From Chlorokybus atmophyticus (taxonomy: Eukaryota; Plantae; Mesostigma and Chlorokybus algae): DNA of 64,000 nt. Below are positions 5,603 through 41,994 of this stretch, piece by piece (positions within the stretch are counted from its first letter, which is position 1; each line of letters begins with the position of its first letter). The stretch spans positions 1,225,932-1,289,931 of the forward strand of contig RHPI01002090.1 of assembly GCA_009103225.1 (NCBI GenBank), given 5' to 3'. The notes beneath the pieces are model-generated. The model searched no databases. It saw nothing but the letters and a program-made list of their open reading frames with translations, and was not told where the DNA came from. A program made the position numbers and the translations under genes.

Positions 5603-8600
5603 CTAATGGTCATGGGCCTGGTGCTTGTTGGAGTTGACAACATAAGACCTGTAAGTTGTGCTGATCTCAGTGGCAGTCTTGCGAATGTTCTCAAAGGCGC
5701 CCTCTTGTCTAGCAACTTTCTGTACACTCCGGGATATTTTCCTCGCAAGCTTGGCGGCCAGTGCAGACCTTTGGCGCACCGACAACTTTGAAACCTGCCA
5801 ATGCCAACATTGTCAATTGTTGCTGTATTCCAGAAACATGTGACGCATCCATCTGTTTTGCGTACCTCATCTGTATCAAACGCTTCTAAGATGCCGCCCC
5901 CGCGCCGAGGGACCGCAAGCTCCCGCCAGTCCATCGGGTAAAAGCCAAACTCATTAGCTAGAGCCTGCACGGCGGTCGCATCAGGTTTCAATCGCAAATC
6001 ACACAACTGCTGGACCGCAACATTCAGCGTGCAAGCTGACAGAATGTGTTCTCCAAACAGCACCTGATGCAGTTGCGACCGCTGTGTGCCAATGACACCC
6101 TTGACTATCCCCCGATAATCCGCGCTAGCACCCTGTGAAACAATTGTGTTTCCTTGACGATCTACAAGCATCTGATCATGGACCGACATGCACACAACAT
6201 CAGCAACCTGCATGCCGTAGTACACACCTGACCGTGGATTTCTACAGTCGGGACACCGCGAGCCGCCTGGTCACTCAGAGCTTGTTATCAAGATGTCAAG
6301 CGCATGGCATCTCAAGACTTAAATACTGTGCAATAGCGTTTGCAGGTCGTGACGTATCAATCAGATGAAATACCTGAGCTGATATCCAATCAAGGTAATC
6401 GTCCCATTGCATAGTGGGAGCATCCCGATCGGGCCGCAGGACCCGCCAGCCGCTGGTGGAAAGCTGGGTCGTGACACGATTTGCCACCTGTGACAGCATC
6501 ACCAATGTCATAACGATATATCAAATGCCGTCAACAGCAACTACTCGGCTACAATGGTTGGAAAGGATCCCATGCATTGCTGATCTGCAATAACAAAAAG
6601 TGTATTGAGGGTCATCAGGAGCCGCTGACCTCCATGTTGAAGTTTCGCTCGCCTGGAGCACCAGTGTCATCCTCTGGGTCAATCCAGTGGCCGGGCACAA
6701 TGGCGACCATGTTGCGGGTGGCTTTGGTTCCGGCGGTTGCCATAATGTCCACATCATGGTACTCTTTGGCTTGTAACCTGAGAGCCTTGGCCGTGCGAAA
6801 CGTGCTGCCAGATCTGATCAAGTCCAACTTAAGGTCATGAGGGACTACCTCTCCTTCTAGTGTTGGCCTGCGCCCTGAGTAAGCAGTATACCCAAAATTT
6901 GATACATTATACTTGTAAGTGTTGTGATGCAGCGAACACTTCATGCATGTGAGAAGGCTTTCAGTCCCAATGACAATAAAGCCAGCACGAAGATGAATAA
7001 TGACCTGCAACAACTGGCAGCTCAATGTGGCCTCCGAACACTGCTGTCGTTCTGCGATCCACAGGGATGGGCTTTTCAAACTGCGACACCAGCTTCGGGT
7101 TGCCGGAGTTTCTGTACACGCGAAAGAACTCAACGGGCTGCCAGTCCACCTCCACCGAGAACAACGGTTTGTGGGCGTTGTCTCTGCTGATCTGCCACGA
7201 GCCGCGGAGCGTGATGCCCACCGGGCCAACGCGAACAACGCGCTTGATGGACACAACGGGGACAGGTAACAACTCCAGAACGGGCCGCACACCTGGTATG
7301 ATATAATGTTGGGTACCATGCACATGTTGATGATGTATGTAACCTGTACAGATAAAACAGGCATACCTATGTCCCCCATGCCCACCATGCGTTCAAACTT
7401 GATGCGTACTGAAGGATGAAAGCTTACTCCGCCCACACTAACAGTGCCAGCACCAGAACCGACAGCCACGTTCCCAAACGGTTTTGTCACAAACAGCGCG
7501 TTAGAATCTGTGTCATGGTGGTTTGTACTATGGCTGTTCCCGTTTAGAAGCAAATCGGAATCATGCTTGTCGCCCCCTCGCCAGTCCCGGAACGACGGGA
7601 ATCGCATGGATGCCATGCCGCCCACCTGCAAAGACACAGGGAGAAACGGCCATCGCCATGTACCGTTGGAATCTGCGGCCATGGCGTCATGAGTGCAGGC
7701 TGATGGCAGAGGACAGGTATGCATGCGTGCATGAAGTTTTGTACTTACTCAGGCCCAGTGCTTGAGGCAGCGACCACGATCTTCGCACGGTTAGCTGCGG
7801 TTGTGCGGGAGCCGTGACACCTTCTCGGCATCTGGCTGTCACCTTCCAGCGATACGCCTATACGCACAGAGGTGTCATACAAGCATGTTTCCAGGAGCAC
7901 TGTTCTGCTTAAACAGAACTGCAACGTTATTGCCACGAGTCAAGGCAAGCCCTTCCATGCATGCCACAACTGCGATACACGAGAGTCGAGATAAACATGG
8001 CTTGATAACGCAGGCATCGTAATGACGTTGACCACGAGCAACGTGTGGCAAGGGCTGTCATACACGAACACAGAGCACAGAGCACTTGCATGTGAAGAGA
8101 GCATGCATGGGCATCATGAAAAGAAGGACATCATGTCCGTCATACAGAGTGCGCAACGTACAGTGGCTGATGCAGGTGCTCATTGCAAGGTGGTGCAACT
8201 CATACAAGCATAGTTCACTGTAGACATCTGCTTAAGCAGCACACAAGCAGCCGAGCTCGCACGTCCCATGCACTTGACACCGTTCTGCATTGCAATGGGA
8301 AAGCTCTCAAGGCGGGAAGCAACAAAGCATAAAGAAGTTGTCACAAAAGAAGCAACCCCAACCAGCAAACAACGCAAGCAATCACGGCGATTGGTCTCGC
8401 TGTTGTAGTCTCTCACCCTGGGAGGCCCGTAGCCAATCTTCCTGTCGTTCTCGGCCTCAGGCTCGAGTCCTCTGCAGCGCACGCCAACGCAGAAGCCCTC
8501 GTCGTCGTAGCCGTCCCAGTGGGGGTCCCAGTTGCTGCGCTCCCGCTGCGCCATGCCCCTGTGCCCATGCCCGTGGGAGTGGCTGTGCCCGTGACTGTGC

Positions 8601-8611
8601 CCATGCTGCAT
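5603..8611 (-). CDS. His-rich N-terminus + beta-strand-rich domain + N-acetylmuramoyl-L-alanine amidase (Amidase_3-like) domain
   Basis: Phase-consistent GT-AG exons 8611-8417, 7625-7367, 7292-7005, 6874-6630, 6487-6374, 6266-6228, 6132 (or 6171)-6064, 6009-5866, 5785-5603. Motifs MVAIVPGH...DTGAPGERNFNMEVANRVTTQLSTSGWRVLR, VEIH and PRRGGGILE match the Amidase_3 H/E/H/E pattern. Confidence 0.75.
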
Positions 8612-10262: not shown

Positions 10263-12631
10263 TGCACTGCACTACCAGAGTGTGCACATGTAACTCCCTC
10301 AAGCGGAGCTGGCAGCCATACGCATTTACTCGCAGAGGCACGACTATCTGGCCAGTCTGAGACACGTCCACATGCTCCGTCACTGTCTTTCAGGGACAGG
10401 GGCACCATGGTTGCAAAGTCCCCCCCNNNNNNNNNNNNNNNNNNNNNNNNNNNNNNNNNNNNNNNNNNNNNNNNNNNNNNNNNNNNNNNNNNNNNNNNNN
10501 NNNNNNNNNNNNNNNNNNNNNNNNNNNNNNNNNNNNNNNNNNNNNNNNNNNNNNNNNNNNNNNNNNNNNNNNNNNNNNNNNNNNNNNNNNNNNNNNNNNN
10601 NNNNNNNNNNNNNNNNNNNNNNNNNNNNNNNNNNNNNNNNNNNNNNNNNNNNNNNNNNNNNNNNNNNNNNNNNNNNNNNNNNNNNNNNNNNNNNNNNNNN
10701 NNNNNNNNNNNNNNNNNNNNNNNNNNNNNNNNNNNNNNNNNNNNNNNNNNNNNNNNNNNNNNNNNNNNNNNNNNNNNNNNNNNNNNNNNNNNNNNNNNNN
10801 NNNNNNNNNNNNNNNNCCCGGCGCGTCCACCCTGTGCGCGCGGGGAAGTGGAGGCACTGTCAACACCACAAAGGCTCACGTGGGCCTGGTTGGTTGATTG
10901 GTTGGTTGGTTGGTTGGATATGTGAATATATTGGGTTGTACCAAGGTGTGTGCACTGCCATGCACAGTTGTTGTCTTTGTTGTCGAGCAGCAGTATGACA
11001 AGCCCGTCTTACATAGCTCCAAACGTCTTACATATCTGTGCATGTGGTAAGCCACATCAGCCCGAGCACATCTGTCTCCTACCCCACCCCACTCACTCTA
11101 GTCTCACTAGTAAATTGCTTTGTTTGGGGCCATGGCAAATGGGCAACACGACAGCTATAAACACATGTGTAGCAGCAGTCGTTGGGGTAGCGACAGCACA
11201 CGATACCCGCAAGGGAGGGAGCACTAGATTGCTAGTCCTACACCCCTCGGGACATGTGTATTGTGTGTCATTGATCTTTTGAACCATTCCTCCTCCTTCG
11301 ACTATTCAATGTTGATGTTGGTCAAGTAGAGAGAGAGAGAGAGAGCGGAGAGAGAGAGAGAGAGAGATAGCTCTCAACCTGATAGTCCCCCCGCCGCGCG
11401 CTGTTAAAATATAATGTTAATGTTATAGCTGCTTTGCATGCTTTTTAAGGAGTCCAACGCGAGTGTCATCAATTGTTTTGTTCAAAATCAACACATACAA
11501 ATATTTGCACACCAGAGGGCTTGCAGAGAGCTTAATGCAGTGCAGAATATGGATTGTGGTGTGTTTAACAGCAAAGGTTTTGCGTACCGTGTCATACGCA
11601 ATGTCGTCGATGGTGTAAAAAAGGTCACCAAACACTATAATGTTTATGTTAACACTCACAATTAGTATTGTTGGTCTCCAAGTCCCAATAGCATGCAACG
11701 CAACACTGGATGTAACACCTAATCAAACATGTGCTCAAACCCAACCCATATTAGCTTGGTCTACTGGTGTTGTCTTGTGCTTGCCTGTTGTAATGGTTGC
11801 TTGCTTTGTGGGCCACAACTTGTGGTCCCTCCATTGCTCCATTGCTCGGATATGATTGTTATCATGTTCGCTGCCATGTCGTCACAATCACTGCGTCGAA
11901 TGTGTGACGTCACACATCGTGACGACACGCAAGTGCGTTACGCCATGCGCATGTCACGTTCGTCATACGGTGCAACGCATGATTATTCGACTTTTCATTT
12001 GCTCGTCTTCTTTTGTGACAGTTACATACACCGTGCTGAGGCGGAGACGAGGGCGGAGTGGGCGGGTAAGAGGTGGGACTGAGGAGGTGGGAGGGGACTC
12101 CTTGAAGGCGAGCGGAAGAGGACGAGCCGTGTGCTGTTGTGAACGCTGACTACCACTTCACCATTTAGGTGTTACAGGCTGTAACTTACAGCAGCAGGTT
12201 GCTTAGTGTGCTGCTTGCACACTTTCGGTCAGCCCTGCTGTTTTGCCGTTGCCCGGGAGGGGAGGACTAACGCTGCTGAGTTAGGGCACCCTGGTGCTCG
12301 AACGAGTTGAGGTAAGCTAGCGGAGAAGACTGTTCGTGTAAATGTCAGTAATAGAGTGAGTGAGTCAGTCAGTCAGTGAGCTCGTCTGTTGGTTGTTTGG
12401 AGTCTGAAGGAAGAATCTTGATGCTTCACAGCCACACACAGCAGCGATGTATTGTTGCAAAAGCGTTCGAACTTCAGCCACCTACGTCAACACCCGCCAC
12501 ACAGTAGTACTAAAATTCGCATACACATCAAGCTGCACGTTTTGTGCCTTTACTCGAAGCTCTTTGTTGCTGAAGTACTCACCTTTGTCAAGCCAATGCC
12601 ATTGCAATTGCTGCACCATTTTTTTACTTCT

Positions 12632-41335: not shown

Positions 41336-41994
<659 letters not shown>

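What the first reader, a model, noticed from the sequence alone, without database searches (positions are those of the whole stretch)
6720..8611. Unusual N-terminal half of the amidase: His-repeat plus amphipathic beta-strand domain, no transit peptide
Seen: the protein starts MQHGHSHGHSHSHGHGH, then an acidic W/Y/C segment (WDGYDDEGFCVGVRC), then about 150 residues of alternating hydrophobic/polar strands (HPSVRIKFERM, VVSIKRVVRVGPVGITLRGSWQIS, LFSVEVDWQPVEFFRVY, VFGGHIELP). There is no Ser/Thr/Ala-rich transit peptide, and the divergent RING gene leaves little room for an upstream exon. Established: most plastid outer-envelope beta-barrels lack cleavable transit peptides. Inference: an envelope-anchored beta-barrel/AMIN-like module could place the amidase in the intermembrane space where plastid peptidoglycan lies, and the His tract may bind metal. 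I do not recognise this architecture.
Basis: partly seen in the sequence, partly recalled or inferred. Interest (0 to 1): 0.7.

Follow-up and report, generated by a model that had tools for sequence, protein, structure and literature searches.

The report
Beta-barrel-anchored plastid peptidoglycan amidase candidate
The front half of this Chlorokybus gene is a conserved domain of twelve beta strands that models as a membrane barrel, fused to a divergent cell-wall amidase, which suggests how algae and mosses place a wall-cutting enzyme beside the peptidoglycan layer around their chloroplasts.

Summary
The gene equals the stored JGI Chlorokybus model Chlat1/4018 (P0001, 551 aa, 10 exons).

This N-terminal half is conserved in about 20 orthologues. 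They come from Mesostigma, zygnematophytes, mosses, a fern, Pycnococcus and unnamed picoalgae, and some are transcript-derived. The fusion to the amidase is therefore real.

AlphaFold2 models of the Chlorokybus protein and of the Physcomitrium N-terminal half each give 12 long antiparallel amphipathic strands, at moderate confidence (pLDDT 60-78). Their best structural analogues are membrane beta-barrels. Connections on the side of the termini are fixed in length and conserved; those on the other side are variable, as in bacterial outer-membrane proteins.

The C-terminal half has an Amidase_3 fold with invariant H/E/H/E, but it falls below Pfam's threshold.

No orthologue has a transit-peptide-like N-terminus. 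The His repeat occurs only in Chlorokybus and may lie upstream of the real start. AMIN-like kinship is not supported.

The best reading is an outer-envelope barrel holding an amidase in the intermembrane space. Localisation and activity are untested, and I found no paper describing the family.

The parts
8417..8611 (-). CDS exon 1 (aa 1-65): Met1, His/Gly/Ser repeat, acidic segment with Cys-x4-Cys motif. Modelled as disordered.
   Evidence: pLDDT below 50 for residues 1-65.
8561..8605 (-). His/Gly/Ser repeat (aa 3-17), found only in Chlorokybus.
   Evidence: Absent from all orthologues in A1. TRF finds a 12-bp unit in 2 copies at 8579-8602.
8552..8554 (-). In-frame Met20, an alternative start. 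Its distance to the Cys motif matches the orthologues' starts.
   Evidence: Which start is used is not resolved.
8474..8518 (-). Acidic W/Y segment ending in Cys-x-Gly-x-x-Cys (aa 32-46). This is the conserved N-terminal family motif, acidic then C-x-G-x-x-C-F.
   Evidence: C46 nearly invariant. Forms a small beta hairpin in the Physcomitrium model.
7749..7857 (-). CDS exon 2 (aa 66-101 plus 1 base): strands S1 and S2 (Y-R-W-K-V motif).
   Evidence: Present in P0001. AG acceptor and GTAAGT donor. W69 and P96 nearly invariant.
7367..7672 (-). CDS exon 3 (aa 102-203): the invariant-length 18-residue S2-S3 connection (G-x-W-R-W), strand S3, a variable disordered loop (aa 126-182) and strand S4.
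7005..7292 (-). CDS exon 4 (aa 204-299): strands S5-S11 of the barrel-like module.
6630..6874 (-). CDS exon 5 (aa 300-381): strand S12 (aa 313-325, 6798-6836), a low-confidence linker, and the start of the amidase domain with His362 (6687-6689) and Glu375 (6648-6650).
6374..6487 (-). CDS exon 6 (aa 382-419), amidase domain.
6228..6266 (-). CDS exon 7 (aa 420-432), with the invariant E-I-H-G-Q motif. His430 is at 6234-6236.
6064..6132 (-). CDS exon 8 (aa 433-455), amidase domain.
5866..5964 (-). CDS exon 9 (aa 456-488), with invariant Glu482 (5884-5886).
5603..5794 (-). CDS exon 10 (aa 489-551 plus stop): long C-terminal helix.

Best explanation
The gene encodes a two-module protein.

**Barrel module.** Residues 66-325 form a 12-stranded antiparallel amphipathic beta-barrel. 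I propose that it sits in the plastid outer envelope membrane.

**Amidase module.** Residues about 355-500 are a divergent zinc amidase of the Amidase_3 (MurNAc-L-alanine amidase) fold, followed by a long helix.

**Topology.** With an even number of strands, both termini lie on the same side of the barrel. That side also carries the short, conserved turns, and I take it to be the intermembrane space, where plastid peptidoglycan lies. The long, variable loops would face the cytosol.

**Delivery.** The barrel would replace a transit peptide. Outer-envelope barrels are taken through TOC into the intermembrane space and inserted from there by OEP80. The attached amidase would be left next to its substrate, much as OmpA leaves its peptidoglycan-binding domain in the periplasm.

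**Function.** The enzyme would cleave stem peptides from the glycan during plastid growth or division, perhaps together with the LytM protein DipM.

**Shown here:** the gene structure, conservation of the fusion, the 12-strand amphipathic pattern, the loop asymmetry, the Amidase_3 fold, the invariant H/E/H/E, and the lack of a transit-peptide-like N-terminus.

**Inferred:** barrel closure, membrane insertion, orientation, substrate, and the link to division.

The His repeat is a Chlorokybus-specific low-complexity extension and is probably not functional.
For: **Gene and fusion**
- The stored model P0001 is identical to the window's exons.
- About 20 orthologues of 430-650 aa share both halves. 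They include a TRINITY ORF from Netrium and proteins on transcript-sized Logan contigs.

**Fold of the N-terminal half**
- AF2 of P0001 gives 12 strands of 6-13 residues (ten of them 9 or more) at pLDDT 60-78.
- AF2 of the Physcomitrium N-terminal half again gives 12 strands.
- Foldseek places both models with membrane barrels. The full-length model hits OmpU, OprB, OmpC, a designed 12-strand transmembrane barrel (TMt 0.57), VhGalP, Omp33 and FapF.
- The N-terminal-only model hits a barrel chain of the Chlamydomonas TOC-TIC complex (probability 1.0), VDAC1, OMPLA, FapF, Tom40 and the designed barrel.

**Sequence pattern**
- Dyad hydrophobic/charged alternation is conserved in all 12 strands.
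- Connections on the terminus side have fixed lengths (18, 9, 2, 5, 4) and are conserved. Four of the six on the opposite side vary widely in length (2-23, 10-57, 2-13, 10-35) and are poorly conserved.

**Amidase half**
- Foldseek gives probability 1.0 and TMt 0.55-0.63 to AmiC2, CwlD, Rv3717 and AmiB.
- 9 of 17 family members give weak Amidase_3 hits.
- H362, E375, H430 and E482 are invariant.

**Context**
- N-termini are acidic.
- Barrel import through an intermembrane-space intermediate and OEP80 is described in PMC8836251.
- Moss peptidoglycan is reported in the intermembrane space (PMC12681378).
- Named orthologues come from lineages reported to keep plastid peptidoglycan (PMC9434261 abstract; PMC4815162). 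No seed-plant hit appeared.
Against: - Model confidence is moderate (mean pLDDT about 62, pTM 0.41).
- Foldseek E-values for the N-terminal-only model are weak (0.04-0.3), with TM-scores of 0.3-0.44.
- I could not read model coordinates, so barrel closure and a hydrophobic belt were not checked.
- Alternating strands alone do not separate a membrane barrel from a soluble one.
- The N-terminal half matches no Pfam or NCBIfam barrel family.
- The amidase scores below Pfam's gathering threshold, and profile searches of PDB sequences find nothing.
- Localisation, processing and activity are unknown.
- The two structure models share one family alignment, so they are not fully independent.
Confidence: 0.5

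Rival explanations
1. The 12-strand module is a soluble beta-barrel or beta-rich domain that binds peptidoglycan or regulates the amidase. The protein would reach the intermembrane space by some other non-canonical route, or would act in the cytosol on released muropeptides.
For: - Amphipathic alternation fits soluble barrels too.
- Model confidence and TM-scores are modest.
- Moss DipM1 also lacks a predicted targeting peptide yet is found at the chloroplast surface and is processed (PMC4015805). Non-canonical routes therefore exist.
- The most conserved piece is an 18-residue connection on the amidase side, which could be an interaction site.
Against: - High-probability structural analogues are membrane barrels. 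Soluble folds such as propellers score a probability below 0.3.
- A 12-strand barrel with charged inward positions has no conserved helix to fill it.
- The loop-length asymmetry is typical of membrane barrels.
- No known peptidoglycan-binding family (AMIN, LysM, SPOR, PG_binding) is detected.
Confidence: 0.3
2. Inverse-autotransporter-like topology. The N-terminal 12-strand barrel would pass the C-terminal amidase through its own pore to the opposite face, as intimin and invasin do with their passengers.
For: The order of parts is the same: an N-terminal 12-strand barrel, a linker of about 30 low-confidence residues, then a C-terminal soluble domain.
Against: - No intimin or invasin structure is among the top 50 Foldseek matches of either model.
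- No helix or linker was modelled inside the barrel.
- This topology would put the amidase on the cytosolic face, away from peptidoglycan (inference).
Confidence: 0.05
3. The N-terminal half is an AMIN-like septal-targeting domain, as in bacterial AmiC.
For: Foldseek's top match for the full-length model is E. coli AmiC, which carries an AMIN domain. AMIN binds peptidoglycan around chloroplasts when expressed in plants (PMC9954125).
Against: - There is no Pfam AMIN hit even at E<=10.
- The AmiC alignment has rmsd 13.9 and TMt 0.36, and the match is explained by the amidase domain.
- The N-terminal-only model does not retrieve AmiC.
- The module has 12 long strands over 260 residues. AMIN, from my own knowledge, is a sandwich of about 100 residues.
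Confidence: 0.03
4. Gene-model artefact: the 5' exons and the amidase exons belong to separate genes.
For: No transcript data for Chlorokybus were available here. The Mesostigma model P0003 is N-terminally shorter.
Against: - The same two-part architecture occurs in about 20 orthologues.
- It is seen in complete ORFs from transcriptome assemblies and in 467-aa proteins on contigs of about 1.6 kb.
- All exon borders are canonical and in phase.
Confidence: 0.02
5. The His repeat is a functional metal-binding tract that supplies or senses zinc or nickel for the amidase.
For: It contains eight His in 15 residues at the very N-terminus, and the enzyme fold is zinc-dependent.
Against: - It is absent from every orthologue.
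- It is encoded by a short imperfect DNA repeat.
- It is modelled as disordered.
- It lies upstream of Met20, which matches the orthologues' start spacing, so it may not be translated.
Confidence: 0.1

Closest known systems
Bacterial cell-division amidases AmiC / AmiC2 (AMIN + Amidase_3) and minimal Amidase_3 enzymes (CwlD, Rv3717)
   Same: The catalytic fold matches by Foldseek (probability 1.0, TMt 0.55-0.63). His/Glu/His plus Glu are invariant at the expected order and spacing. An N-terminal non-catalytic module precedes the enzyme.
   Different: - Sequence is so divergent that Pfam scores 15-17 bits against a threshold of 27, and PDB profile searches find nothing.
- No bacterial or archaeal species genome holds a close relative.
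- The N-terminal module is a 12-strand barrel rather than AMIN.
- There is no signal peptide.
OmpA-type architecture (N-terminal outer-membrane barrel + C-terminal periplasmic peptidoglycan-binding domain)
   Same: The order of parts is the same, and so is the proposed logic: the barrel anchors in the outer membrane and the soluble C-terminal domain stays on the peptidoglycan side. The OmpA barrel is among the Foldseek matches.
   Different: The barrel has 12 strands rather than 8. The C-terminal domain is a hydrolase fold rather than an OmpA_C binder. The protein is eukaryotic and nucleus-encoded. No sequence kinship is detected.
Chloroplast outer-envelope barrels (OEP21/24/37, TOC-associated barrels such as those in 7xzi)
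   Same: It has a barrel-like fold without a transit-peptide-like N-terminus. The top N-terminal-only Foldseek match is a barrel chain of the Chlamydomonas TOC-TIC complex. The biogenesis route through the intermembrane space and OEP80 (PMC8836251) would fit.
   Different: No sequence match to any Pfam barrel family was found. It carries a large enzymatic domain. It is not among the categories discussed in the main text of the 2026 chloroplast-barrel survey, which mentions neither amidase nor peptidoglycan.
DipM (LysM + LytM), the plastid peptidoglycan hydrolase known from Cyanophora and moss
   Same: It is a nucleus-encoded putative peptidoglycan hydrolase with no predicted targeting peptide in moss. 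DipM sits at the chloroplast surface or in the intermembrane space (PMC4015805). The phyletic pattern is similar.
   Different: The catalytic fold and the targeting module both differ. That study found no Ami-type amidase in photosynthetic eukaryotes by motif search.
Inverse autotransporters (intimin / invasin)
   Same: An N-terminal 12-strand barrel is followed by a C-terminal soluble domain.
   Different: They are not retrieved by Foldseek. Export of the passenger to the far side would take the amidase away from peptidoglycan.

Membership tests
Amidase_3 (PF01520, N-acetylmuramoyl-L-alanine amidase) | Pfam profile match above the gathering score | tested here: not met
   Scores are 14.9-17.3 bits against a cut-off of 27 (E 0.005-0.03). 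9 of 17 family members give similar sub-threshold hits.
Amidase_3 (PF01520, N-acetylmuramoyl-L-alanine amidase) | Alpha/beta Amidase_3 fold | tested here: met
   In the AF2 model, pLDDT block means over residues 351-500 are 69-93, mostly above 80. Foldseek gives probability 1.0 and TMt 0.55-0.63 to 5emi, 7rag, 4m6i, 3czx and 8c0j.
Amidase_3 (PF01520, N-acetylmuramoyl-L-alanine amidase) | Zinc ligands His, Glu, His plus a catalytic Glu | tested here: inconclusive
   H362, E375, H430 and E482 are invariant in 21 sequences, in the expected order and spacing. Their equivalence to the ligands was not checked by superposition, because model coordinates could not be read.
Amidase_3 (PF01520, N-acetylmuramoyl-L-alanine amidase) | Cleaves the MurNAc-L-Ala bond of peptidoglycan | not testable with these tools
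   Requires an enzyme assay.
Transmembrane beta-barrel of an outer membrane or outer envelope | An even number of long antiparallel amphipathic strands joined as neighbouring hairpins | tested here: met
   12 strands in each of two orthologue models: 6-13 residues in P0001 and 7-14 in the Physcomitrium model, most of them 9 or more. Dyad alternation is conserved in all 12.
Transmembrane beta-barrel of an outer membrane or outer envelope | Closed barrel with an outward hydrophobic belt | tested here: inconclusive
   The best structural analogues are membrane barrels. TM-scores are only 0.3-0.57, pLDDT is 60-78, and coordinates could not be inspected.
Transmembrane beta-barrel of an outer membrane or outer envelope | Short turns on the side of the termini and long variable loops on the other side | tested here: met
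   Terminus-side connections are fixed in length and conserved. Four of six opposite-side connections vary 2-23, 10-57, 2-13 and 10-35 residues.
Transmembrane beta-barrel of an outer membrane or outer envelope | Sequence membership in a known barrel family (OEP, porin, Omp85, and so on) | tested here: not met
   No Pfam or NCBIfam hit to the N-terminal half. A phmmer search of 1.8 billion representative proteins finds only Chlorokybus and Mesostigma.
Transmembrane beta-barrel of an outer membrane or outer envelope | Integral membrane localisation | not testable with these tools
   Requires fractionation and protease protection.
AMIN domain (PF11741) | Profile match, or an AMIN-type beta sandwich of about 100 residues | tested here: not met
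   No hit at E<=10. The module has 12 long strands over about 260 residues. The N-terminal-only model does not retrieve AmiC.
Cleavable chloroplast transit peptide | N-terminus rich in Ser/Thr and nearly free of acidic residues | tested here: not met
   The first 50 residues of nearly all orthologues hold 4-9 Asp/Glu and begin with an acidic run and a conserved Cys motif. No dedicated predictor was available.

The most novel reading that the evidence does not exclude
A eukaryote-specific family, kept in green lineages that retain plastid peptidoglycan, joins an outer-envelope beta-barrel to a highly divergent Amidase_3 enzyme. It would be the missing plastid peptidoglycan amidase. It would also be the first case of a barrel used as the delivery and anchoring device for an intermembrane-space enzyme, and it may be the partner of DipM in chloroplast division.
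Probability: 0.4. Interest if true: 0.8.

Novelty: new variant of a known kind. Interest (0 to 1): 0.7.

Why it matters
Plastid peptidoglycan is now accepted in streptophyte algae, mosses and ferns. Its turnover enzymes and the way they reach the intermembrane space are poorly known. A 2014 motif search found no Ami-type amidase in photosynthetic eukaryotes (PMC4015805).

This family offers three things. It is a concrete amidase candidate. Its architecture explains the missing transit peptide. It also has a moss orthologue (XP_024400487.1) that can be knocked out and localised directly. If the barrel is confirmed, it adds a new class to the small list of chloroplast outer-envelope barrels.

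Tried and rejected
**Searches that found nothing useful**
- Pfam on single exons gave nothing.
- My first hand-built model of the amidase exons was wrong. I had read one long exon at 6207-5866, and the stored model and the orthologues corrected it.
- A word-based search with the N-terminal region found only the protein itself.
- A phmmer search of the N-terminal region against 1.8 billion representatives found only Mesostigma plus one stray hit in a 2447-aa protein that I did not follow up. The module therefore evolves too fast for single-sequence searches.
- Profile searches of PDB sequences with the whole family and with the amidase domain found nothing meaningful.
- NCBIfam gave nothing.
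- A scan of bacterial and archaeal genomes with the N-terminal profile could not run, because no stretch was conserved enough.
- The same scan with the amidase profile found no relative.

**Literature**
- Searches for a plastid amidase or a barrel-amidase fusion found nothing.
- Utsunomiya et al. 2021 on moss peptidoglycan hydrolases is not held in the library. From memory only, it does not treat an Amidase_3 protein.

**Readings rejected**
- AMIN-like module.
- Functional His tract.
- Two separate genes.

I used the stored database model P0001 instead.
Full report
**What is in the window**

The gene lies on the minus strand. The ATG is at 8611, with only five open codons upstream before an in-frame stop. 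It is followed by a His/Gly/Ser repeat, an acidic W/Y segment ending in a Cys-x4-Cys motif, and then stop-free pieces with alternating hydrophobic and polar residues.

I searched the longest natural stop-free piece by reference, restricted to the exon that begins the amidase. This returned the stored JGI model Chlat1/4018 of Chlorokybus (P0001, 551 aa) at 100% identity. The window is therefore Chlorokybus nuclear DNA.

Mapping P0001 back onto the three reading frames gives ten exons:

| Exon | Window coordinates |
|---|---|
| 1 | 8611-8417 |
| 2 | 7857-7749 |
| 3 | 7672-7367 |
| 4 | 7292-7005 |
| 5 | 6874-6630 |
| 6 | 6487-6374 |
| 7 | 6266-6228 |
| 8 | 6132-6064 |
| 9 | 5964-5866 |
| 10 | 5794-5606 |

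All borders are GT-AG and in phase. I did not build a joined sequence myself. All later work used P0001 and other stored proteins.

**Corrections to the observation**

Both are real coding sequence, because they carry some of the best-conserved residues of the N-terminal half. These are a Y-R-W-K-V strand, an L-P-Q-x-L-G-L segment and a G-x-W-R-W turn. W69, P96, W107, W109 and P113 are nearly invariant in 21 orthologues. The beta-rich module therefore runs from residue 66 to 325, about 260 residues, not about 150.

**The family**

A search with the amidase region found 22 proteins. Named sources are:
- Mesostigma
- three Closterium strains
- Netrium
- Spirogloea
- Mesotaenium
- Physcomitrium
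- Sphagnum
- the fern Adiantum
- the prasinophyte Pycnococcus

The rest are unnamed transcript-sized or metagenomic contigs. None is annotated beyond 'uncharacterized' or 'hypothetical', and none has a precomputed Pfam domain.

All but one share the N-terminal half as well. The fusion is therefore ancient and is not a gene-model artefact. It occurs in complete transcriptome ORFs and in 467-aa proteins on contigs of about 1.6 kb.

Two apparent exceptions were examined:
- A short metagenomic protein (P0002) looked like a stand-alone amidase. It is probably a truncated gene call, because an upstream ORF in another frame of the same contig matches strands S6-S9 of the family profile (hhalign E 5e-5, probability 67%).
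- P0023 has a Lys/Glu/Arg/Ala-rich N-terminal region instead of the barrel module.

No seed-plant protein appeared, although the amidase motifs are strongly conserved. The named taxa are lineages reported to retain plastid peptidoglycan (PMC9434261 abstract; PMC4815162). That the distribution tracks peptidoglycan is my inference from this limited list.

**The N-terminal half**

No Pfam, NCBIfam or PDB-sequence match exists. A phmmer search of 1.8 billion representative proteins with residues 118-290 finds only Mesostigma.

AlphaFold2 with the 21-sequence family alignment models residues 66-325 as 12 antiparallel strands at pLDDT 60-78. The strands are 6-13 residues long, ten of them 9 or more. 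Residues 1-65 and 135-180 are disordered. A second model, of the Physcomitrium N-terminal half alone, again gives 12 long strands plus a small hairpin at the Cys motif.

Foldseek results for the two models:
- **Full-length model.** It matches two classes of structure, Amidase_3 enzymes and outer-membrane barrels. The barrels are OmpU, OprB, OmpC, a designed 12-strand transmembrane barrel at TMt 0.57, VhGalP, Omp33, FapF and OmpA.
- **N-terminal-only model.** E-values are weak (0.04-0.3), but every high-probability match is a membrane barrel. The list is a barrel chain of the Chlamydomonas TOC-TIC supercomplex, VDAC1, OMPLA, FapF, Tom40, VhGalP and the designed barrel. Soluble propellers score a probability below 0.3.

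Two sequence-level tests agree with a membrane-barrel reading:
- All 12 strands keep a dyad alternation of strongly hydrophobic and mostly charged positions across the family.
- The connections on the side of the termini have fixed lengths (18, 9, 2, 5, 4) and are conserved. Four of the six on the other side vary widely (2-23, 10-57, 2-13, 10-35) and are poorly conserved. This is the asymmetry of bacterial outer-membrane proteins.

I could not read model coordinates, so barrel closure and the direction of the hydrophobic face remain unverified.

**The C-terminal half**

Pfam's Amidase_3 profile matches only below threshold. The modelled fold is nonetheless clearly Amidase_3. H362, E375, H430 and E482 are invariant, in the order and spacing expected for the three zinc ligands and the catalytic Glu. 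No bacterial or archaeal species genome holds a close relative of this divergent form.

**N-terminus and His repeat**

Family N-termini are acidic and carry a conserved Cys-x-Gly-x-x-Cys-Phe motif directly after the start. Most are followed by a Pro/Tyr-rich stretch, which Chlorokybus lacks. This is the opposite of a transit peptide as described in PMC8836251.

The His repeat exists only in Chlorokybus, is encoded by a short 12-bp repeat, and is modelled as disordered. It precedes an in-frame Met20 whose distance to the Cys motif matches the orthologues. It may not be translated, and I see no support for a conserved metal-binding role.

**Mechanism proposed**

The module is a 12-strand barrel in the plastid outer envelope. 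With an even strand number, both termini lie on one side, the side with the short conserved turns. The amidase hangs from that side.

Outer-envelope barrels are reported to pass through TOC into the intermembrane space and to be inserted by OEP80 (PMC8836251). A barrel-first protein would therefore leave its C-terminal enzyme in the intermembrane space, where moss peptidoglycan is reported (PMC12681378). This works like OmpA with a hydrolase in place of the binding domain.

DipM is the known plastid LytM hydrolase. It also lacks a predicted targeting peptide in moss (PMC4015805), and it is a plausible partner by analogy with NlpD and EnvC activating Ami enzymes. That link is speculation.

The main rival is that the module is a soluble barrel or binding domain and that targeting works in another way. 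I put the proposal at 0.5 and this rival at 0.3.

**Novelty**

PMC4015805 found no Ami-type amidase in photosynthetic eukaryotes. PMC4815162 lists no amidase. The main text of the 2026 survey of chloroplast barrels mentions neither amidase nor peptidoglycan. My other searches found nothing. One relevant paper, Utsunomiya et al. 2021, could not be read.

I rate the finding a new variant of known kinds: an Amidase_3 enzyme with a new, barrel-type N-terminal module. It belongs to an uncharacterised family restricted to green algae and non-seed plants.

Noticed in passing
window 8552-8554 (minus strand): An in-frame Met20 follows the His repeat. Its spacing to the conserved Cys motif matches the orthologues' start codons, so the annotated Met1 may not be the start used.
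   Followed up: partly
orthologues P0004-P0021, residues about 20-35 (alignment A1): A conserved Pro/Tyr-rich stretch of the type Y-x-P-P-P-x-Y follows the Cys motif in most orthologues but is missing in Chlorokybus. It resembles a PPxY ligand motif.
   Followed up: no
L001:26-700 (+), metagenome contig Ga0255779_1085919: The 226-aa 'stand-alone' amidase P0002 is probably a truncated gene call. An upstream ORF in another frame matches barrel strands S6-S9 of the family profile (hhalign E 5e-5, probability 67%).
   Followed up: partly
P0023 (723 aa, JGI metagenome): The same divergent amidase domain is preceded by a long Lys/Glu/Arg/Ala-rich, probably coiled-coil region instead of the barrel module. 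The organism is unknown.
   Followed up: no
P0003 (Mesostigma model, 466 aa): The model starts inside the S2-S3 connection and lacks the Cys motif and strands S1-S2. It is likely an N-terminally truncated gene model.
   Followed up: no
Its exon structure was not worked out.
   Followed up: partly
window 41338-41993: A (GA) dinucleotide microsatellite of about 327 copies explains the strong GC and AT skew in this stretch.
   Followed up: yes
window about 1640-1830: A long (CA)n/(TG)n microsatellite containing an ambiguous base.
   Followed up: no
window about 10300-10800: A run of N, an assembly gap, just beyond the neighbouring gene.
   Followed up: no
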